This document shows, piece by piece, positions 41,946-52,795 of a stretch of DNA of 64,000 bases. The stretch covers positions 1 to 64,000 of the IMG/VR virus record IMGVR_UViG_3300032285_004054. The stretch is one strand, 5' to 3'. The notes under the pieces were generated by a model. The model did not search any database. It saw only the letters and a program-made list of their open reading frames with translations, and was not told the DNA's origin. Each line of letters opens with the position of its first letter. Positions within the stretch are counted from its first letter, which is position 1. A program made the position numbers and the translations under genes.

Positions 41946-43796
41946 TTATACGTCGACAGGGAATACTTTGCCCTTTTTCTCTAAAATGTCGTATCTACCA
42001 TCACCATTAACCATGAAAATTAGATTCTTTTGAGGGTTCTTAACTTCAGGTAATTGAGGATTATCTTCAACGTAACCGTCAGTGAAGTAAATGATATTAT
42101 CGACCTTTGTTATTTTTAAATGATCTAGTAATTTCTTAACACTTGACATTAAAGTGCCGCCTTCCTTAACAGGGAGCTGTTTAACCTTGGCCATAATAGC
42201 AGGTACAGATGATTTTTTACTATTTACAATCTCGTGATAATAAGCATTAACATTCCAAAGAATGAGCATTAATTCTACTTCCTTAAACTGTTTTAATAAC
42301 TGGAAAATATAACCAATATAGATGCTAAGCACTTCATCGTTAATAGAACCACTTGTATCGATAGCAATAATGGTTTTAACCTTCTCTTGCTCTTTTATAG
42401 TGCGTCCTTGATAAACAAGATTAGATGCTCCTCTACTACCTGTAGCAGCAGCCATTCTAATATTAGGCTTGGACATATCAGATCTTAGCTGATTAGAAGG
42501 TTTAATAACATCCTTTAAGATTTGTCTCCAATCTACTTTAACCTTTTCTTCACCGAACTTATTACGAAAACCGCCTTCAGCATTACCTCTGTTAGAGGCC
42601 TGTTGCTTAGCTCGATCAACCTTATTCCTCATATCGGCTTTCTTTTGAGCTTCAGTTGTCCCTGGTGCAGGCTGGTTCTTATTGTAGATAGGGTTATCTG
42701 AAGGCATATTAACTTGTCCCGGAGATCCCTTACCTGCTGTAATATGCTTATCGAGTTGTTCTTGTTTACCTGCTAGTGATTCTTTGAATGTAGTATCGTC
42801 TTTTAAGCCTTGGTCTTCTTTTTGTTGACCGCCTTGTCCCTGACCTTTACCTTGTTGTTGCTGTTGATCGTCTTGTCCTTGGCCCTGACCTTCTTGTTCG
42901 TTGCCTTGTTGACCTTGAGCTTGTTGATCACCTTGCCCAGGCTGTGGTTGCCCGCTTTGACCTTGACCAGGCTGTGGTTGCCCGCTTTGACCTTGACCTT
43001 GTTGAGAGTTGCCTTGTTGATTCTGATTCTGGTTACCTTTCTTCTTCTCTTGTTCGTTGTCGAGCTTCTCAAATACCTTGTAAAGCTCTTCAGCTGTCAT
43101 GTCGGTAATGTCTGTACCTGCTACCTCCATAGCATGTTCCATAGGAGGTAGTACCCAACGACCACCTTCCTGTAGCGGTAGACAGCCAATAGAAGGAAGT
43201 TTATAACCAGACTCAAGAATATCTCTATTCATGACGAAGTCAGTAGCAACGTTCCAGAGTGTATGATCTTTGCGACCTTTTCTAAAGAATGTATTATTAG
43301 CAATGTGAAGAGTCTCGTGTAATAGAACACCAATAACTTCTTCGTAAGAAAGCTGCTTTAAAGCAAAATTGGGATTAATATAGATATTCCCGTAATCATC
43401 TACACCCATTGTAGGTACATCGTATGTAACTACTGTTTTAAGATTCTGTAATAGAATACCATAGTAAGGAGCGCGCTTATAAAGTTCGTAACGTGCTCTT
43501 GTTAGAAGGTTATCGAGTCTTGTAAGCTCATCTGTAGAAAGTTCTTGATACTGATTCTCTTGAGAGTTAAGCGCGACATCGAGCTGTCTTTCAATTTCAT
43601 CAATCTGCTCATCAGACATCCCTTGTTTCTTTAATTCCTTTCTCTGCTTATCAGACATCTTATAAGGCTCACCAGGCTTTCTAGGGTTAGGATTTTCGTT
43701 AACCTCGGTTAATAGCCTACTTTGAGGTAATCTAGCTTCAAAAATCAATCTAGAATAGACACTCGAAAGCTGTTTGTCTTCTTTTCTATAGTACAT
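41946..43796 (-). CDS. metallopeptidase + VWA domain protein (DUF2201-type)
   Basis: T.GVD..G.IY.NP.F, HETLH, WN.A.D; Q/G linker; IDTSGSI, GGT, FTDG MIDAS. Confidence 0.9.
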   Translation of the reverse strand: MYYRKEDKQLSSVYSRLIFEARLPQSRLLTEVNENPNPRKPGEPYKMSDKQRKELKKQGMSDEQIDEIERQLDVALNSQENQYQELSTDELTRLDNLLTRARYELYKRAPYYGILLQNLKTVVTYDVPTMGVDDYGNIYINPNFALKQLSYEEVIGVLLHETLHIANNTFFRKGRKDHTLWNVATDFVMNRDILESGYKLPSIGCLPLQEGGRWVLPPMEHAMEVAGTDITDMTAEELYKVFEKLDNEQEKKKGNQNQNQQGNSQQGQGQSGQPQPGQGQSGQPQPGQGDQQAQGQQGNEQEGQGQGQDDQQQQQGKGQGQGGQQKEDQGLKDDTTFKESLAGKQEQLDKHITAGKGSPGQVNMPSDNPIYNKNQPAPGTTEAQKKADMRNKVDRAKQQASNRGNAEGGFRNKFGEEKVKVDWRQILKDVIKPSNQLRSDMSKPNIRMAAATGSRGASNLVYQGRTIKEQEKVKTIIAIDTSGSINDEVLSIYIGYIFQLLKQFKEVELMLILWNVNAYYHEIVNSKKSSVPAIMAKVKQLPVKEGGTLMSSVKKLLDHLKITKVDNIIYFTDGYVEDNPQLPEVKNPQKNLIFMVNGDGRYDILEKKGKVFPVDV

Positions 43797-43820
43797 GAAT
43801 ATATTATTTATTAAAAAAGC

Positions 43821-43895
43821 TGGAGCATCGGGTGAGAATCGAACTCACTATAAAGGGTTTTGCAGACCCTTGCCTGGCCAGTTAGCTTCCGATGC
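43821..43895 (-). tRNA. tRNA-Cys(GCA)
   Basis: Cloverleaf: GCATCGG/CCGATGC-U-CCA, anticodon arm AGGGT-CTGCAAA-ACCCT, TTCGA loop. Confidence 0.92.
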
Positions 43896-43896
43896 A

Positions 43897-44028
43897 TTAT
43901 TTTATAATTTTATGAAGAATTTTAGAAATAATCAATGCTAAAATTTTAACAGTATATACAAATAGCCCTAATGCAAGAAAAGGTAAGATCATTAGGCCGA
44001 AACCTACACCCTCATCAGCGGTGAGCAT
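43897..44028 (-). CDS. small membrane peptide (43 aa) between tRNAs
   Basis: ATAAATACTTAC-ATG; hydrophobic core. Confidence 0.55.
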   Translation of the reverse strand: MLTADEGVGFGLMILPFLALGLFVYTVKILALIISKILHKIIK

Positions 44029-44039
44029 GTAAGTATTTA

Positions 44040-44130
44040 TGGAGGAAGCGGAGGGATTCGAACCCTCGGAGGCGATAAAACCTCTGCAGTTTAGTAAACT
44101 GCTGCAATAGGCCAGCTCTGCCACACTTCC
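44040..44130 (-). tRNA. tRNA-Ser(ACT), long variable arm
   Basis: GGAAGTG/CGCTTCC-U-CCA; anticodon arm GCAGT-TTACTAA-ACTGC; variable stem GAGG/CCTC. Confidence 0.85.
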
Positions 44131-44137
44131 AAATACT

Positions 44138-44665
44138 TTATACTAAATCTTTAAAATAATGTCCTTGCTTATCCTTTTCAGATAATACAGGATATGGTAC
44201 ATCCCAGCTTATATTCAAATCCGGATCATTCCACATTAAAGTTTTTTCATATTCAGGATATCTAAAATCAGATACAAGATACTGAAACACTGCTTTTTCA
44301 GATTTTACATGAAAGCCATGAGCACAACCTTCAGGGACATAAATCAAAGTATCTCCTCTGAGTAACTGCGAGTCCCATTGACCAAATGTTGGAGAGTCTT
44401 TTCTTAGATCAACAAAAACATCTAATACAGTACCAGAACTAACCCAAACTAATTTTGCTTGAGGATGTTCAGATTGGTAATGTAGACCTCTTAAAACATT
44501 TTGTTTTGAAACACTACGATTCATCTGAACAAACTTTGTATCAATACCTAATACTGTACTAAAGTCTTGCAAATTCCAAGTTTCAGAAAATGAACCTCTA
44601 TCATCTTCATACACTTTTGGCTCAATAACCCAAGCCCCTTTTACTTTTGTTTCTTTGACTATCAT
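44138..44665 (-). CDS. rmlC: dTDP-4-dehydrorhamnose 3,5-epimerase
   Basis: DDRG.F.E, Q.N.S.S...VLRGLHYQ, QAKLV, DV.VDLR..SPTFGQW, G.AHGF. Confidence 0.95.
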   Translation of the reverse strand: MIVKETKVKGAWVIEPKVYEDDRGSFSETWNLQDFSTVLGIDTKFVQMNRSVSKQNVLRGLHYQSEHPQAKLVWVSSGTVLDVFVDLRKDSPTFGQWDSQLLRGDTLIYVPEGCAHGFHVKSEKAVFQYLVSDFRYPEYEKTLMWNDPDLNISWDVPYPVLSEKDKQGHYFKDLV

Positions 44666-45648
44666 TGCATCCAGGCCCTGTTTTTGAGTGTCCAGGCAAT
44701 TACATCTCTTAAAGAATCTTCAAAGTCTAATTCAGGTTTCCAACCAAGAGATTTTAGCTTTGAATCATCCAGAGCGTATTTCTTATCATAACCTGGTCGA
44801 ATTGCTGTCTCTTCTACGAGTTCAATCTTAGCAGGTATGTTCATAATGTGAGAGATCTTATCTACTAGATCAACGTTACTAATTTCATCATGACCTCCAA
44901 CATGATAACGATCAGGGAGCTCTTCAAAGTCTGCACTTGTATAAGGAGCTACCCATCTCTGCATTACAAAATTAATTGCCGAGCAAAGATTACGAACGTG
45001 AATATATTTTCTCGCACCAGACTTACCATTACTAGAATAGATAGGAATCGTCTTACCTTCGTAGATGTATTTGATTGTCTTCGGAATCATCTTCTCTACA
45101 TTTTGCATCTTACCAAACATATTTTGACAATTAATAATCGCTAAAGGTGTTCCATAGGTTCTCCAATAAGAGATAGCAATAGCTTCCTGACATGCCTTGG
45201 AAGCTGAATAAGGATTAGATGGGACAATCTTAGCCCATTCCTTATGAGGTACATCATAGTACTGACCATAGACTTCATCCGTAGAAAGATGAATAAACTT
45301 CTCTACATTCTTTCTCTTTGCGAAGTCTAATATATTAAGAATAAGATTTACATTGTTAAGAACAACTGAATCAGGATTTGAAATTGAACGATCAATAGCT
45401 GACTCACTTGCTATATTAACGATAATATCAACATCACCTATCTTAGTAGAAAGAACCGGTGAAATAGGTGTATTGAGATCGTGAGTGAAATGACTGAATC
45501 TTTCGTTCTTTGTAATTCTCTGAGAGTCGCCCATATGTCTGAGTGAGTCTAAACCAATTACTTCTACTGTCGGATCTTTTTCTAAAAGGTATTCTACAAA
45601 GTTTGCTCCAACAAAACCTGCACTACCTGTTACTAGTATTCGTTTCAT
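44662..45648 (-). CDS. rmlB: dTDP-glucose 4,6-dehydratase
   Basis: VTGSAGFVG, ASES.IDRSI, STDEVYG, P.NPYSASKA, RPG.D..YA.D. Confidence 0.9.
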   Translation of the reverse strand: MKRILVTGSAGFVGANFVEYLLEKDPTVEVIGLDSLRHMGDSQRITKNERFSHFTHDLNTPISPVLSTKIGDVDIIVNIASESAIDRSISNPDSVVLNNVNLILNILDFAKRKNVEKFIHLSTDEVYGQYYDVPHKEWAKIVPSNPYSASKACQEAIAISYWRTYGTPLAIINCQNMFGKMQNVEKMIPKTIKYIYEGKTIPIYSSNGKSGARKYIHVRNLCSAINFVMQRWVAPYTSADFEELPDRYHVGGHDEISNVDLVDKISHIMNIPAKIELVEETAIRPGYDKKYALDDSKLKSLGWKPELDFEDSLRDVIAWTLKNRAWMQ

Positions 45649-45651
45649 AAA

Positions 45652-46258
45652 ATCTAATTATATTGCACCAGGTGCTCAATCTAGGCGCTAAATTAAACTT
45701 TATTTAACCTCAATACTAATATTGTGTACCTCCGGTTTCACAACAGGTACCTTAACTCGTAGTAACCCGTCTGTGTATGTTGATGAGATGTTCTTAACGT
45801 CCGTATTGTCATTAAGCGTGAAGGACAATTGTCCCTTCCTACGGCTAATGCCTTTACGATGGAAGTGTATAGTCTCATCATGTTCGACCTCTTCCTTATT
45901 AACTGCAATCAAGAGTTTACCTTCCTTGACTGTTACGTTAATATTTTCCTTTCCTACGCCAGCCAATGCTACTTCGATGTAGTAGGTGACCGGATTACCG
46001 TCTGGATCGGTTTCTGATACGATGTTATAAGGATAGACTGCATTTGGAATATCAAATGCTTTATCGAAGTCCTTAAAGACATCACTTAGCCAGCTTTCAT
46101 TAAACAGAGCTGGGAGGTGGCTGTACCCCGCGCCCTGGGCAGGAACGAGCCTGCCGACTGTGTATGGTGTTATTGTTGTTGTCATATTTTTTCTCCTTTA
46201 TTAAGCGAGTTAATATGTTTGCTTTAGGTCTGATTGAGCACCTGAGCAAATATAATTA
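45652..46258. repeat. imperfect inverted repeat pair flanking hsp20
   Basis: Perfect core CAGGTGCTCAATC (45669-45681) / GATTGAGCACCTG (46232-46244), extending imperfectly to ~30 bp. Confidence 0.8.
45700..46185 (-). CDS. small heat shock protein Hsp20
   Basis: YPYNI, Y.IE.ALAG..K..I.V....L.I, GIS.R....F.L, DGLL.V.VP; AAGGAG SD. Confidence 0.93.
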   Translation of the reverse strand: MTTTITPYTVGRLVPAQGAGYSHLPALFNESWLSDVFKDFDKAFDIPNAVYPYNIVSETDPDGNPVTYYIEVALAGVGKENINVTVKEGKLLIAVNKEEVEHDETIHFHRKGISRRKGQLSFTLNDNTDVKNISSTYTDGLLRVKVPVVKPEVHNISIEVK

Positions 46259-46289
46259 TTCTATCTTTATAGAATAAATCAACAAAAAA

Positions 46290-46373
46290 TGGAGCCTGAG
46301 GTGAGATTCGAACTCACGGAGCTTGCGCGTCGGTTTACAAAACCGATCCTATTGGCCACTAAGGGACTCAGGC
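46290..46373 (-). tRNA. tRNA-Thr(TGT) with extended variable arm
   Basis: GCCTGAG/CTCAGGC-U-CCA; TCGGT-TTTGTAA-ACCGA; 12-nt variable region; TTGACT-17-TAATAT promoter upstream. Confidence 0.88.
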
Positions 46374-46417
46374 GTTATTGGTCTAATATATTATCTAATT
46401 AATAACCTTAAGTCAAG

Positions 46418-46780
46418 TTATTTTTCAAAATGTTCTTCTTTTAATTTAGCATTCCAAATCTTAGCATCCTCTACAGAGTTTGGATTTATATTTTTATAAT
46501 CACCTAAATGCCCTACAAGTAAATGGCAGATAATTCCGTAACTAGCACATTCACATAATGTAATAAGATTATCAGGGTCTAATTCTAAATCAGGATGTAA
46601 GTGAAATGGTTTGATATGATGTACGTTTAATTGTTTTGTACCTTCACATATAGCACATTTTGGGTTATTCTTAAGATGTTCTTTACGTGTAGCGGTCCAT
46701 TTAGGAGAACGCTTAGGTCCTCCTGCAGGTATTTTTCCTTTAGCTACATCTAGTGTATGATTTAAACGTGTCGAAGCCAT
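46418..46780 (-). CDS. HNH endonuclease
   Basis: RS.KW...R..HL..NP.CAIC, VHHI.P, NLITLC, CH. Confidence 0.9.
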   Translation of the reverse strand: MASTRLNHTLDVAKGKIPAGGPKRSPKWTATRKEHLKNNPKCAICEGTKQLNVHHIKPFHLHPDLELDPDNLITLCECASYGIICHLLVGHLGDYKNINPNSVEDAKIWNAKLKEEHFEK

Positions 46781-46810
46781 GTAAGTACTTATGTTCAAAG
46801 TACTTTAAAT

Positions 46811-47255
46811 TGGTGGAGGCGAGGGGAGTCGAACCCCTGTGTTTATAATGTTAAGTCTGTACTTCTACACGCTTAGGTAATTTTGACATTTGGTTGAAAT
46901 AGGTTGTCGTGGCTTACCGGCCTTATGTTTGTTTCCTTACCTACTGAGTTGTACTTAGGACTCAGTTCCAGACACCGTTTATTTTATTGGCTCAGATGAC
47001 CCACCAAACCTATTGTTTAAGCTCCTAAGATTTTTAATAGGATCCAATCTTAGTTTTTAGGCTGCGAGGAGGTATTCGTCCTCAACACCGGCGAGGATCT
47101 CGTCGGCGTGATTAATACAATACTCAGCTTCAGCTAAGAGCGCATCAGTGTTGTCTTCTGCGTTTAGTTTTTTTAATCTGATTTTATAGTGGCCATCAGA
47201 TCAACCACTGCGTGCAATACAAAGTTCGATTATAAGTCGAATCCAGTACGCCCCC
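46811..47255 (-). ncRNA. ssrA: tmRNA (445 nt)
   Basis: 5' GGGGGCGTACTGGATTCGAC; 3' GGGGTTCGACTCCCCTCGCCTCCACCA with G3-U70; internal tag ORF 47161-47057 ending YLLAA*. Confidence 0.93.
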
Positions 47256-47297
47256 ATAATTTCAAAGAACTATGTATAGTTTATATTCTAACTATAT

Positions 47298-47840
47298 TTA
47301 TTCAACTGAATAGTTAATGTTCATTATAACTCTTCTAGGCACTGTTGTAGGTGTAGTACCTGCATGATACTGTTGACCGTCAAAGCATAACAGTCTATTC
47401 CTTTTAGGTAGTACTTCTGCCTGTACAGTGAAATCTGTAGGCGTTATAGCACTTTCTCTTTCATTGTAGATTATAGTTGGACCGTCAGAATCATTTATGT
47501 ATAAAAGAGCAGTACGATGGTTACCGTCCCTATCAACATGAGCTCCTGCATTGTATGGTTTATCTGTTGCAGTGTTTAAAATCATACGCACCCTAAAAAC
47601 ATCTTTAACGTTTTCTCCAGCAAGCTGTAAAATCCTATAAACTGTTCTAGCAAATATACCTTGTTCACCTTCTACCCAGGTAAGACCTCCGGTTATAATA
47701 TGAAACCAGCTATACAGAAACAAATTGTCTTCTTCTGAGCCGTTACCCTTTCTTCCGAAGTACCAAGGAAACTTACCCATTACTTTGTGTTCAAGTATTG
47801 CGAATTCCTCTTCGGGTAAAATATTATCAATTATTTTCAT
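47298..47840 (-). CDS. 2OG-Fe(II) oxygenase
   Basis: IIDN.L, H.D, LLYIN.SDG.T, PK.NR...FDG..YH, R...N.N. Confidence 0.88.
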   Translation of the reverse strand: MKIIDNILPEEEFAILEHKVMGKFPWYFGRKGNGSEEDNLFLYSWFHIITGGLTWVEGEQGIFARTVYRILQLAGENVKDVFRVRMILNTATDKPYNAGAHVDRDGNHRTALLYINDSDGPTIIYNERESAITPTDFTVQAEVLPKRNRLLCFDGQQYHAGTTPTTVPRRVIMNINYSVE

Positions 47841-50416: not shown

Positions 50417-52795
50417 ATGGCGATATTAACCCCGATATTAACTGGTGGCAACGGTACACCTACTTATAACCCAGGTTTAGCAGAGACTTATTCATGGGTA
50501 CCGATTGATAATAATCAGGGTAGACCGATGTTTGCAAAGCTAGGCTATATTACTAACTTAGGTGATATTGCTGTTAGTCTTACTGCTAACAATCTTAATA
50601 TCGGTAATATACATATTAGTGATCCTCTAGATACAGGTTTAAGTGTCGGGGTTATACCTATTACAACAGTTGGTAATACAACAGTCGGCGCAATGTATGT
50701 GCACACACAAGATTTTGAATCAACTATTGATAATATTACAATAGGAGATTCAAGAGGTAATTTAACTTCAGTAACAAATAGCGCGTTAAATGTTTTTAAT
50801 ACAAACCCGGTTAGTGCTATATCTGTTACGAATTCTGTAACAGCCGTAACTGTTTTAAACCCTGTAAGTTCATTTAGCTTAACAAATCCAATTACAGCTG
50901 TTTCTGTAACAAACTTTCCAACTCAGTTAACAGCCGTTAGTGTTACTAATCAATTGACCGGTATTACTATTCTCAATACAGTATCTTCTGTTAGTGTAGT
51001 TAATCAACTTTCTTCTTTTACAGTTAATAATCCTATTACTGCTGTACAGGTTCTAAACCCAGTAAGTGCTGTGTCGATTGTTAATCAGTTAACAAGTACG
51101 AGTGTAACAGTTTTAAACCCTGTAAGTTCGTTTAGTTTAACAAATCAAATTACAGCAGTCTCTGTTACAAATCCAGTAAGTGCTTTTGATATAGTTGCTT
51201 GTAATGTAACTCTTCCTGTTTCCGGAACAGTTACTATTACTAATTCAATTTCTACAACACCAGTTGGTACACAGCTGGTAACATTTGATCGTGGCCCTCA
51301 GCTTGATACAAATAACAGACTTAAAGTTGCAACACCTTCTCAATCTTGGTGGTATATATCATCTGTCGATAAGGATGGTGATTTAAGAATAATTGAATCA
51401 TTTACAACTGGTGCATCGAGCATCTTTGTTCAGAATATAGCTTCTGTTACTATGACATCTGGACCAAGTTTAACAGGTTCAGCAATAAGGGCATCAAGAA
51501 GAAGATTTAAGGTAAGACCTGGTGTTTCTCACGAATGGCTTGGTACAGTTAATTTTGATGGACAGGATGCCGGGGCAATAAAGAGAGTTGGTACATTTAC
51601 AAATTACAATGGTATGTTCTTTGAGTTATCTGGAACAGACTTCAATGTTGTTGTTCGCAGAAGATTAGCTGATGGAACATTAGTTGAAGAAAGAGTCAAT
51701 CAAACTAATTTCAATGTTGATAAGTTAGATGGAAATGGTCCATCTAAACAAAATTGGTATACATCCCTCTCTGGTTCTATAACTGGTGGAACAAATAGAT
51801 GGCCTGTTGCAATTACTGGTGATGGAAATGTCTACAATGCTTCATTTACCTATTCAAATGGTTCGCTCTCTGCATTAAAGCCTGGAACAAGAGGAACAAT
51901 ATCGGGTGTATCTCCTTCTGGTTATAATGGTGCTGTCTTTATCGCAGCTAATAATACAGCAACTAGTACATTAACTGCTACATATGTTATCGACCCAGGT
52001 GTTTATAGTAGTGTTAGCAATGCTAGATTTATTACAACTCCTTACCACAATGCTCATACCCTTTGGTTTGAGTTTAATGGTGGTAGAACAGCTAAAGTTA
52101 ATTTCGGCATCAATGGATCAAATGGTCCAGCCTATCTACATCAATTTGATTTCTCCAATCAAATAGGATTACAATATGAAAGTGCACCAGCGTTGATGGA
52201 TAGAAAAGAAATCCTCAATTATAGTGCAATGTCATATAACCCAACAATGACATTGGATGGTACATCAATTAACATTGAAGCAGAATCATCATTAAACCCT
52301 GCGTTTGTTGCTGCTTATAATACTACACCAATTACTCTAACAGCTGGAAAAGAACAACCCATTCTTGGTGTTGGTTTAAGAGTAGGTGAACCTTATCAAA
52401 GATCTGATTTACAAGTTCAGCAGATGAATATTATTGATACTGCTAACCTCAATACCGGAGGTAATGCTAAGATTACTTCATCTCTTGTTCAATGGAAGTT
52501 ATTATTAAATCCAGGTCTCTCTGGTGTACCAGCTTCAACTGACATAGGTAAGTCCTCGAGACAATGGGCTTATACAGCTACAACATCTATTACATCACAG
52601 GGTATTGAACTTATGTCTGGATTTGCCACATCTAATTCCCCAATTGATGTTAAGACATCTTTGAACTTCTTAAACATGGGTTCAAATATCAATTATACAG
52701 ATGCCGATAAAGTTGTTCTTACAGCCAAACTCGTAGCTGCTGGAACAGATCCTTCAACAATCGTTGGATCGATAAACGCTATCGAAGCGCTGTAA
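50417..52795 (+). CDS. virion structural protein with V/T/S-rich repeats
   Basis: TAVSVTN/LNPVS repeats; N-term shared with 56176-56604 and 60165-60518; TAAATA upstream. Confidence 0.8.
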   Translation: MAILTPILTGGNGTPTYNPGLAETYSWVPIDNNQGRPMFAKLGYITNLGDIAVSLTANNLNIGNIHISDPLDTGLSVGVIPITTVGNTTVGAMYVHTQDFESTIDNITIGDSRGNLTSVTNSALNVFNTNPVSAISVTNSVTAVTVLNPVSSFSLTNPITAVSVTNFPTQLTAVSVTNQLTGITILNTVSSVSVVNQLSSFTVNNPITAVQVLNPVSAVSIVNQLTSTSVTVLNPVSSFSLTNQITAVSVTNPVSAFDIVACNVTLPVSGTVTITNSISTTPVGTQLVTFDRGPQLDTNNRLKVATPSQSWWYISSVDKDGDLRIIESFTTGASSIFVQNIASVTMTSGPSLTGSAIRASRRRFKVRPGVSHEWLGTVNFDGQDAGAIKRVGTFTNYNGMFFELSGTDFNVVVRRRLADGTLVEERVNQTNFNVDKLDGNGPSKQNWYTSLSGSITGGTNRWPVAITGDGNVYNASFTYSNGSLSALKPGTRGTISGVSPSGYNGAVFIAANNTATSTLTATYVIDPGVYSSVSNARFITTPYHNAHTLWFEFNGGRTAKVNFGINGSNGPAYLHQFDFSNQIGLQYESAPALMDRKEILNYSAMSYNPTMTLDGTSINIEAESSLNPAFVAAYNTTPITLTAGKEQPILGVGLRVGEPYQRSDLQVQQMNIIDTANLNTGGNAKITSSLVQWKLLLNPGLSGVPASTDIGKSSRQWAYTATTSITSQGIELMSGFATSNSPIDVKTSLNFLNMGSNINYTDADKVVLTAKLVAAGTDPSTIVGSINAIEAL

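What the first reader, a model, noticed from the sequence alone, without database searches (positions are those of the whole stretch)
44040..44130. tRNA-Ser with a normally avoided ACU anticodon
The anticodon loop is UU-ACU-AA in a well-paired class II body with CCA. Bacteria read AGY with GCU. A34 tRNAs are essentially limited to Arg(ACG), and I34 here would risk misreading AGA (Arg). AGT codons are visibly abundant in the Ser-rich fibre genes. The discriminator is U73 rather than the usual G73. It may match late codon bias or evade anticodon nucleases.
Basis: partly seen in the sequence, partly recalled or inferred. Interest (0 to 1): 0.6.

Follow-up and report, generated by a model that had tools for sequence, protein, structure and literature searches.

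The report
Phage serine tRNA with ACU anticodon
A 218-kb phage carries a well-formed serine tRNA whose anticodon starts with A, which textbooks say cells avoid. The same kind of tRNA turns out to be common and conserved in uncultured phages, so it is a natural test case for why A-starting anticodons are normally avoided.

Summary
Window 44040-44130 (minus strand) encodes a 91-nt class II tRNA with anticodon loop UUACUAA (anticodon ACU), U73 and an encoded CCA. ARAGORN and Rfam both call it, and a second assembly of the reads reproduces it.

It is not an error or a one-off. A pattern scan found Ser(ACU) tRNAs in at least 121 viral contigs (114 distinct sequences, about 55 clusters). Compensatory changes occur in 21 of 25 stem pairs. 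In one sample of viral class II Ser-type tRNAs, ACU made up 13 of 47 AGY readers. In Patescibacteria it was about 1 in 200 genomes, against 38% for GCU.

The phage uses the standard code and is AT-rich. It has 1228 AGT, 488 AGC and 1059 AGA codons, and no TadA gene.

Best reading: a host-charged tRNA-Ser that reads AGU by a Watson-Crick A34:U pair, standing in for tRNA-Ser(GCU) in AGU-rich phages. This is tolerated because seryl-tRNA synthetase ignores the anticodon.

The A34/I34 state, charging and expression were not tested. The loop differs from the TadA motif YUACGAA only at position 36.

I found no paper describing natural Ser(ACU) tRNAs.

The parts
44040..44130 (-). tRNA-Ser(ACU): a 91-nt class II tRNA with anticodon loop UUACUAA (window 44097-44091), A34 at 44095, U36 at 44093, U73 at 44043 and encoded CCA at 44042-44040
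   Evidence: ARAGORN; Rfam tRNA 49.8 bits, E = 1.8e-8; sequence; fold -34.3 kcal/mol, z = -2.4; same cloverleaf with 21 of 25 covarying pairs in 55 related sequences; Logan contig with 0 differences
43821..43895 (-). tRNA-Cys(GCA), 144 nt downstream of the Ser tRNA on the same strand
   Evidence: ARAGORN; Rfam 49.4 bits
44138..44665 (-). rmlC (dTDP-4-dehydrorhamnose 3,5-epimerase). Its stop codon lies 7 nt upstream of the tRNA 5' end, so the tRNA is probably made from the same transcript (inferred).
   Evidence: NCBIfam TIGR01221, 201.9 bits, above the cut-off; PHROG 8784; ORF list; no promoter-like site above shuffle expectation
44662..45648 (-). rmlB-like dTDP-glucose 4,6-dehydratase / NAD-dependent sugar epimerase, upstream and co-oriented
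   Evidence: TIGR01181, 239.8 bits, below the curated cut-off of 365; PHROG 540
46290..46373 (-). tRNA-Thr(UGU) of the same tRNA/tmRNA island, with an unusual 14-nt unpaired variable loop
   Evidence: ARAGORN; Rfam 52.5 bits
46811..47255 (-). phage-encoded tmRNA of the same island
   Evidence: Rfam RF00023, 111.7 bits, E = 1.2e-43; candidate tag read

Best explanation
This is a functional phage-encoded tRNA-Ser that decodes AGU by a Watson-Crick A34:U3 pair. It takes the place that tRNA-Ser(GCU) has in other phage tRNA sets.

Steps, each marked shown or inferred:
1. The gene lies 7 nt after rmlC on the minus strand and already encodes CCA (shown). It is probably cut out of the rmlB-rmlC-tRNA transcript by host RNase P and 3' processing enzymes (inferred).
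2. Host seryl-tRNA synthetase charges it through the long variable arm, G2:C71, A3:U70 and C11:G24 (these features are shown in the sequence). SerRS does not read the anticodon (established identity rules, from memory). A G34-to-A34 change therefore costs nothing in charging, unlike in the other split-box tRNAs, whose synthetases read position 34 (inferred).
3. U36-A37 fits the rule for t6A37 on tRNAs that read ANN codons (inferred).
4. A34 probably stays mostly unmodified. The phage has no TadA, and the loop UUACUAA lacks the G36 of the TadA motif YUACGAA (inferred from PMC12255301).
5. The tRNA supplies the phage's most-used AGY codon. Demand is highest in the Ser-rich tail and structural genes. 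AGC is left to the host's GCU tRNA, and AGA to the phage's own tRNA-Arg(UCU).
For: Gene reality.

The class is conserved and under structural selection. ARAGORN calls Ser(act) in 121 viral loci, giving 114 distinct sequences in about 55 clusters. In 55 cluster representatives, 21 of 25 pairs show compensatory changes. No ACU tRNA is more than 89% identical to any non-ACU Ser tRNA sampled, so these are not fresh point mutants. ACT labels are clustered on the tree: 45 changes against 156 in shuffles.

ACU replaces GCU. The two co-occur in only 2 of 121 loci.

Codon match. The phage has 1228 AGT and 488 AGC. ACU-bearing viral contigs are all AT-rich (GC 27-46%) and use AGT at 19.8 per 1000 codons, against 14.3 in GCU-bearing contigs, p = 3e-4. 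Structural genes in the window have 27-34 AGT per 1000, against 12.9 in non-structural genes.

Other points. The rest of the phage tRNA set also matches A/U-ending codons that it uses heavily. The code is standard, with 90% coding density under table 11. No TadA family match in the phage, with the control ringing in 12 of 14 genomes. Engineered Ser-tRNA(ACU) in E. coli improved growth parameters in at least two media when overexpressed, and its mistranslation likelihood was estimated as low from codon usage (bioRxiv 10.64898/2026.05.15.725136).
Against: Nothing shows expression, charging or the A34/I34 state. No RNA run holds this stretch.

The host is unknown, so the supposed shortfall of host tRNA for AGU is assumed.

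The anticodon loop matches the TadA motif at 6 of 7 positions. One-mismatch sites make up 26% of natural TadA mRNA edits, so partial I34 cannot be excluded. AGA is abundant here (1059 codons), so the 'low mistranslation likelihood' argued for E. coli does not carry over.

The excess in AGT/(AGT+AGC) share of ACU-bearing over GCU-bearing contigs is weak (0.68 against 0.59, p = 0.045) and vanishes after controlling for GC (p = 0.39).

U73 replaces the usual G73, which is kept by 90% of the class.

Unmodified A34 has been reported to read more than one codon in family boxes (cited).
Confidence: 0.62

Rival explanations
1. The host's TadA (or another deaminase) converts A34 to inosine. The tRNA would then read AGU and AGC like a GCU tRNA, and would also misread AGA (Arg) as Ser at some rate.
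For: The loop UUACUAA matches the TadA motif YUACGAA at 6 of 7 positions and sits in a 7-nt loop on a 5-bp stem. 26% of natural TadA mRNA sites carry one mismatch to that motif. In E. coli, Phe-tRNA(AAA) and an orthogonal His(AUG) tRNA appear to be deaminated. ACU replaces GCU rather than joining it in phage tRNA sets, which would make sense if one tRNA covered both AGY codons.
Against: Mutating single positions of the motif abolished or nearly abolished editing in two transcripts, and the four-base core UACG is described as required. I34 would pair with A, and AGA is the phage's main Arg codon at 1059 uses, 49% of Arg, so heavy Arg-to-Ser error would follow. The phage has no TadA. Two Patescibacteria genomes that carry Ser(ACU) have no TadA-family match.
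Confidence: 0.17
2. The ACU anticodon is kept mainly as a counter-defence. It would be a spare AGY decoder that a host anticodon nuclease, or a system depleting tRNA-Ser(GCU), does not recognise.
For: Only circumstantial. ACU is far more frequent relative to GCU in viral contigs (13:34) than in the cells sampled (about 0.5% against 38% of Patescibacteria genomes). That phage tRNAs can escape tRNA-cleaving defences through loop changes comes from my own memory of published work and was not checked here.
Against: I know of no nuclease aimed at tRNA-Ser(GCU), and none was found here. No T4-type RNA ligase was detected in the phage that would point to a tRNA-repair contest, though the control genomes were silent, so this is weak. 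The link with AT-rich, AGT-rich contigs is explained more simply by codon supply.
Confidence: 0.1
3. The gene is a neutral or decaying copy with no role in translation: a G34A or anticodon-swap accident that is tolerated because the tRNA is weakly expressed.
For: U73 instead of G73. No promoter-like site above chance. No expression data. Raval et al. find that single-copy ANN tRNAs carry no severe cost in E. coli, so drift is possible.
Against: The cloverleaf is intact and CCA is encoded. The class persists across about 55 sequence clusters with compensatory changes in 21 of 25 pairs and an unchanged ACU. No member is a recent mutant of a sampled GCU or UGA tRNA. The nearest relatives of the window's tRNA in other phages keep ACU.
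Confidence: 0.06
4. Assembly or sequencing error: the true anticodon is GCT.
For: None found.
Against: An independent assembly of the source run at word depth about 23 has no differing letter over 43821-46500. The same anticodon occurs in 121 other viral contigs and 120 genome contigs.
Confidence: 0.01

Closest known systems
Bacterial and phage tRNA-Ser(GCU), the standard AGY reader (for example in Synechococcus phage S-PM2 and Aeromonas phage TSW001)
   Same: Class II body, long variable arm, U36-A37-A38, same codon box. 75-80% identity to annotated phage tRNA-Ser genes.
   Different: A34 instead of G34, so Watson-Crick pairing is with AGU rather than AGC. ACU and GCU are almost never found together in a phage locus. 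This copy has U73.
tRNA-Arg(ACG) with TadA: the one near-universal bacterial A34 tRNA, deaminated to I34
   Same: A34, with U33, C35, A37 and A38 identical. The loop matches the TadA motif YUACGAA at 6 of 7 positions.
   Different: U36 instead of G36. It reads a split box, where I34 would misread AGA. It is class II with Ser identity. The phage has no TadA.
Natural unmodified or lineage-specific A34 tRNAs of family boxes: Thr(AGU) in Mycoplasma and Leu(AAG) in Lactobacillales
   Same: A-starting anticodon kept over evolutionary time in AT-rich genomes rich in U-ending codons.
   Different: Those read four-fold boxes, where loose pairing by A34 is harmless. ACU reads a two-fold box shared with Arg. 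In GtRNAdb, such split-box ANN tRNAs occur only sporadically and always beside the GNN tRNA.
Engineered Ser-tRNA(ACU) in E. coli (Raval, Lim, Gallie, Agashe 2026, bioRxiv 10.64898/2026.05.15.725136)
   Same: Same anticodon on a native Ser backbone. Overexpression improved growth parameters in at least two media, and mistranslation likelihood was judged low from codon usage.
   Different: That tRNA is a laboratory G34A construct in a host where AGA/AGG are rare. Here the tRNA is natural and phage-borne, and AGA is the main Arg codon.
Chromosomal tRNA-Ser(ACU) of some Patescibacteria (for example Parcubacteria RAAC4_OD1_1, locus L222)
   Same: Same loop and class II body. No TadA-family match in that genome either.
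   Different: Cellular, and sits beside a GCU tRNA rather than replacing it. Rare: 1 of 200 sampled genomes of the phylum. About 85% identity at best to viral copies.

Membership tests
tRNA (Rfam RF00005) | Cloverleaf scoring above the family's gathering score | tested here: met
   49.8 bits against a gathering score of 29, E = 1.8e-8, full model 1-71; ARAGORN call
Bacterial class II tRNA-Ser | Long variable arm with a paired stem | tested here: met
   16-nt arm GAGGU-UUUAUC-GCCUC with 5 pairs. The arm covaries in 55 relatives.
Bacterial class II tRNA-Ser | Acceptor and D-arm identity pairs G2:C71, A3:U70 and C11:G24 (E. coli rules, from memory) | tested here: met
   Read directly from the sequence. 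The rule itself was not re-checked in a source.
Bacterial class II tRNA-Ser | Discriminator G73 | tested here: not met
   U73 at window 44043. U73 also occurs in 9 of 121 viral Ser(ACU), 5 of 60 viral Ser(UGA), and the Mvi-JY20 and Ursula Ser(UGA) tRNAs, so it is a minority variant of phage tRNA-Ser and not disqualifying.
Bacterial class II tRNA-Ser | Charged with serine by SerRS | not testable with these tools
   Needs an aminoacylation assay or charged-tRNA sequencing.
Phage/CPR tRNA-Ser(ACU) class (defined here) | Class II Ser body with loop YUACUAA, recurring in independent genomes with compensatory stem changes | tested here: met
   121 viral and 120 genome loci; 21 of 25 pairs with double changes; nearest relatives L011/L017/L109 carry ACT
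TadA substrate (tRNA-Arg2-like anticodon arm) | Seven-base loop YUACGAA with core UACG on a stem | tested here: not met
   The loop is UUACUAA, so G36 is replaced by U. Motif taken from PMC12255301. A one-mismatch substrate is not excluded.
Suppressor or recoding tRNA of phages with an alternative code | Anticodon complementary to a stop codon or to a reassigned codon, and genes readable only under another code | tested here: not met
   ACU pairs with AGU, which is Ser in the standard code. Coding density is 90% under table 11, with TAA 188, TGA 41 and TAG 23 as stops.

The most novel reading that the evidence does not exclude
Phage tRNA-Ser(ACU) is a naturally selected decoder with unmodified A34 in a split codon box. 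It would be the first widespread natural exception to the rule that A-starting anticodons are either absent or deaminated. Two accidents of recognition would allow it: SerRS ignores the anticodon, and TadA needs G36. Phages would favour it because it reads only AGU, the codon that AT-rich phages prefer, giving phage messages their own decoding capacity independent of the host's GCU tRNA.
Probability: 0.35. Interest if true: 0.75.

Novelty: new variant of a known kind. Interest (0 to 1): 0.62.

Why it matters
Why nearly all life avoids unmodified A at the wobble position is an open question (reviewed in PMC8007984; tested by engineering in bioRxiv 10.64898/2026.05.15.725136). Those surveys rest on GtRNAdb genomes and treat split-box ANN tRNAs as sporadic.

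This window points to a large natural population of such tRNAs. There are at least 121 phage contigs, and ACU made up roughly a quarter of phage AGY readers in one sample, with rare chromosomal copies in Patescibacteria.

If A34 is unmodified, these tRNAs show that the 'forbidden' anticodon is workable where charging and deamination do not depend on it. They would also provide ready material for measuring A34 decoding accuracy against a neighbouring amino acid (AGA, Arg). If A34 is deaminated, phages would be tolerating or exploiting Arg-to-Ser misreading. Either outcome is informative.

It also bears on annotation. Ser(ACT) calls in phage genomes should not be dismissed as errors.

Tried and rejected
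**Relatives of this phage**
- Megablast of 43000-47500 against GenBank phages: no match.
- The distant search gave only 74-77% tRNA-Ser hits.
- The search for related loci with the neighbouring 496-aa ATPase: none.
- blastn and tblastn of all fetched loci against the genome: only 27-54% protein identity.
- The metagenome scan for this tRNA's anticodon arm with a free anticodon re-found only the contig of L017.
- Synteny of the ACU tRNA in close relatives therefore could not be tested.

**Other searches that gave nothing**
- blastn of the tRNA against E. coli genomes: no match at E <= 1e-3.
- Cultured phages: two representative ACU tRNAs hit only a GCU tRNA of Aeromonas phage TSW001 and unannotated faecal contigs. 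I could not run a census of isolates.
- Sequencing runs: only the probable source sample holds the stretch, and there is no RNA run.
- Promoter and terminator scan: not above shuffles.
- T4-type RNA ligase families in the phage: none, but the controls were silent, so this is uninformative.

**Hypotheses tested and not supported**
- Co-selection with tRNA-Arg(UCU): 31% against 29% of loci, no enrichment.
- AGT share after GC correction: not significant.
- A single origin of ACU: the tree of 473 Ser tRNAs is poorly resolved (87 columns). It implies 24-45 label changes, so neither one origin nor many origins can be claimed.
- Recoding or suppressor reading: rejected.

**Literature**
- Six literature searches found no report of a natural tRNA-Ser(ACU). 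One of them was swamped by 'laser-activated' hits.

Full report
**What is there.** The window is the first 64 kb of a 218.4-kb IMG/VR virus record rated 100% complete. The genome is 36% GC and reads well under the standard code: 252 non-overlapping ORFs cover 90% of it, with TAA, TGA and TAG all used as stops.

On the minus strand at 44040-44130, ARAGORN calls a 91-nt tRNA-Ser with anticodon ACT. Rfam's tRNA model scores it 49.8 bits against a gathering score of 29, E = 1.8e-8. The sequence gives these parts:
- a 7-bp acceptor stem, GGAAGUG/CGCUUCC;
- a D arm with C11:G24;
- a 5-bp anticodon stem, GCAGU/ACUGC;
- the loop U-U-A-C-U-A-A;
- a 16-nt variable arm with a 5-pair stem;
- a canonical T arm;
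- U73 and an encoded CCA.

A34 is window base 44095 and U36 is 44093. The Logan assembly of the only run that holds this DNA, probably the source sample, spans 43821-46500 at word depth about 23 without a single differing letter.

**Surroundings.** The tRNA starts 7 nt after the stop of rmlC (44138-44665). An rmlB-like dehydratase precedes rmlC, and tRNA-Cys(GCA) follows 144 nt downstream. The same minus-strand stretch holds Hsp20, tRNA-Thr(UGU), an HNH endonuclease, a tmRNA (111.7 bits) and a 2OG-Fe(II) oxygenase-like gene. No promoter-like or terminator-like site stands out from shuffles, so co-transcription with rmlBC is the simplest guess.

The whole genome carries 14 tRNAs. Most have anticodons that pair exactly with A- or U-ending codons the phage uses heavily, such as ACA, AAA, AGA, TTA, CAA and GAA. 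There is no tRNA-Ser(GCU).

**Not a one-off.** A scan for the tRNA's anticodon arm with a free anticodon found two other viral contigs (L011, 118 kb; L017) whose Ser tRNA has the same arm and ACT but a different acceptor stem and G73. A 201-kb contig (L015) has the same arm with CGA.

Together with L011 and L017, ARAGORN calls Ser(act) in 121 loci. These give 114 distinct sequences in about 55 clusters at roughly 88% identity, on contigs from 4.5 to 323 kb.

An RNAalifold consensus of the 55 cluster representatives, one of which is the window's tRNA, returns the class II cloverleaf. In 21 of 25 pairs at least one sequence keeps the pair through changes on both sides. The columns fixed by the search pattern cannot vary, but the acceptor, anticodon, variable and T stems do.

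No ACU tRNA is more than 89% identical, with the anticodon masked, to any of 232 non-ACU Ser tRNAs in the set. On a poorly resolved tree the ACT label is strongly clustered: 45 changes against 156 in shuffles. The class has therefore persisted and diversified. These are not fresh G34A slips. The window's tRNA is closest to other ACU tRNAs: L011/L017 at 89% over 70 nt, and L109 at 84% with the same acceptor stem and U73.

**How common.** The same pattern with a free anticodon returned 120 stretches in what appears to be the same fixed scan order. Of these, 13 were loci already fetched by the ACT scan. I take these to be L019-L031; nine (L019-L027) were visible in the listing, and all are ACT. 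The other 107 loci held 60 TGA, 34 GCT and a few other anticodons. In that sample ACU was thus about one in nine matches and 13 of 47 AGY readers.

By record title, 56 of the 120 loci are Patescibacteria lineages, 21 are Planctomycetota and 5 are Verrucomicrobiota. The rest are mixed, including short contigs with phage-like tRNA arrays.

In Parcubacteria RAAC4_OD1_1, Ser(GCU) and Ser(ACU) lie side by side on a 693-kb contig among a histidine kinase, recG, ftsH and a dksA-like gene, which is a chromosomal setting. In a Polynucleobacter isolate the tRNA abuts an integrase. The trait is nevertheless rare in cells. In an even sample of Patescibacteria, the ACT pattern matched 1 of 200 further genomes, while the GCT version matched 23 of 61.

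Relative to GCU, ACU is therefore tens of times more frequent in viral contigs than in the bacterial phylum that gave most hits. The literature survey agrees that split-box ANN tRNAs are sporadic in GtRNAdb genomes.

**Codon demand.** The phage has 1228 AGT, 488 AGC, 1059 AGA (49% of Arg) and 159 AGG. AGT reaches 30-44 per 1000 codons in the large Ser-rich genes of the window, some of which PHROGs names as tail or tail-fibre proteins.

Annotated structural genes have 27 AGT per 1000, or 34 with their large Ser-rich neighbours. Annotated non-structural genes have 13. The AGT share of Ser codons is nearly the same in both groups (0.26-0.29 against 0.23), so the extra demand comes from serine content and not from a late-gene codon dialect.

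Across viral loci, ACU-bearing contigs are all AT-rich (GC 27-46%, median 37%). They use AGT more than GCU-bearing contigs do: 19.8 against 14.3 per 1000, p = 3e-4. The AGT/(AGT+AGC) share is 0.68 against 0.59 (p = 0.045), and this difference is not significant after GC correction. ACU and GCU genes share a locus in only 2 of 121 cases. ACU stands in for GCU.

**Mechanism.** The best-supported reading is a serine tRNA that pairs A34 with the U of AGU.

Why this split box and not the others follows from established identity rules, which I cite from memory and did not test. SerRS recognises the long variable arm and the acceptor and D-arm pairs, not the anticodon. The synthetases for Phe, Tyr, His, Asn, Asp, Cys and Ile read position 34 or its neighbours. 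The sequence has the Ser features except G73. U73 is a minority variant of phage Ser tRNAs whatever their anticodon. U36-A37 fits the t6A37 rule.

The state of A34 is the main unknown. The phage has no TadA-family gene, with the control ringing in 12 of 14 genomes. TadA editing needs the loop motif YUACGAA with core UACG, and single changes abolish or nearly abolish editing (PMC12255301). The loop here, UUACUAA, differs only at position 36. One-mismatch sites make up 26% of natural mRNA edits, so partial deamination by a host enzyme cannot be ruled out.

Inosine would read AGA, the phage's main Arg codon, which argues that selection keeps A34 unmodified. Two Patescibacteria genomes with Ser(ACU) gave no TadA-family match, while a Kuenenia genome did. 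Engineered Ser-tRNA(ACU) in E. coli improved growth when overexpressed, which shows that the anticodon is workable.

**Rivals.**
- An I34 broad reader.
- A counter-defence spare tRNA. There is no direct evidence. No T4-type RNA ligase was detected, but the controls were silent.
- A neutral relic. The conservation of the class argues against this.
- Sequencing error. This is excluded.
- tRNA-Arg(UCU) is not enriched beside ACU, so I found no sign of a paired safeguard for AGA.

**Novelty.** Six literature searches, and reading of the two most relevant papers and one survey of viral tRNAs, turned up no description of natural Ser(ACU) tRNAs in phages or Patescibacteria. The library lacks most subscription journals, so this is no proof of absence.

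The item is a tRNA gene, which is a known kind, carrying an anticodon of a type thought to be excluded. It belongs to a large class that appears to have gone unremarked. I rate it a new variant of a known kind, with interest 0.62. The decisive data are all experimental: the A34/I34 state, charging, expression and decoding accuracy.

Noticed in passing
window 46811-47255 (-): Phage-encoded tmRNA (Rfam 111.7 bits, E = 1.2e-43) that ARAGORN does not report. Read from the usual GCA resume codon, it gives an unusually long 34-residue tag, AEDNTDALLAEAEYCINHADEILAGVEDEYLLAA, ending in the typical LAA. An HNH endonuclease gene (46418-46798) sits directly beside it.
   Followed up: partly
window 46290-46373 (-): tRNA-Thr(UGU) of 84 nt with a 14-nt variable loop that ARAGORN draws unpaired. 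That is unusual for a class I tRNA.
   Followed up: partly
own genome G000:C1:190620-190714 (-) and 190399-190474 (-), outside the window: The tRNA with anticodon UAU ('Ile') is 95 nt with a long paired variable arm and A73, which is class II shape. The tRNA with anticodon UAA ('Leu') is only 76 nt with a 5-nt variable loop, which is class I shape. This is the reverse of normal bacterial Ile and Leu tRNAs. Long tRNA(UAU) genes of 90-94 nt occur in 11 other viral loci. If LeuRS charged them, AUA would be read as Leu. Not tested.
   Followed up: partly
L222:2061-2310 (Parcubacteria RAAC4_OD1_1, 693-kb contig) and other Patescibacteria loci L138-L257: Chromosomal tRNA-Ser(ACU) next to tRNA-Ser(GCU), often with Ser(UGA) and Ile(UAU) nearby. 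The RAAC4 genome and a Paceibacteria genome gave no TadA-family match. Several loci carry tRNA-Arg(GCG).
   Followed up: partly
L147:3195-4658 (Polynucleobacter sp. 31A-FELB, cultured isolate): tRNA-Ser(ACU) directly followed by a tyrosine integrase gene, with a type III restriction enzyme and an IS30 transposase nearby. This looks like an integrated element at or carrying the tRNA, and offers a possible cultivable system for testing this tRNA.
   Followed up: partly
L015:2627-2713 (IMG/VR contig of 201 kb): A Ser tRNA with exactly the window's anticodon stem (GCAGU/ACUGC plus flanking U and A) but anticodon CGA. This is an example of anticodon replacement on one body.
   Followed up: no
viral loci L019-L364 (flanks): ARAGORN calls other A-starting anticodons of split or family boxes: Asp(ATC) x2, Phe(AAA) x2, Tyr(ATA), His(ATG), Gly(ACC), Ser(AGA), Thr(AGT) x3, Leu(AAG) x3. 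None was checked for structure or conservation.
   Followed up: no
L039, L100 (IMG/VR giant-virus MAG contigs); also L024, L044: Shorter 'Ser(ACT)' tRNAs of 83-84 nt with short variable arms, two of them on contigs labelled GVMAG. They may be a different, eukaryote-virus type caught by the same pattern.
   Followed up: no
window 44138-46185 and 47298-47840 (-): Auxiliary genes are interleaved with the tRNAs: rmlC, an rmlB-like dehydratase, an Hsp20-family chaperone and a 2OG-Fe(II) oxygenase-like protein. One structural protein (50417-52795) has its only database relatives in cyanomyoviruses and Puniceispirillum phage HMO-2011, at about 35% identity over 19% of its length.
   Followed up: no
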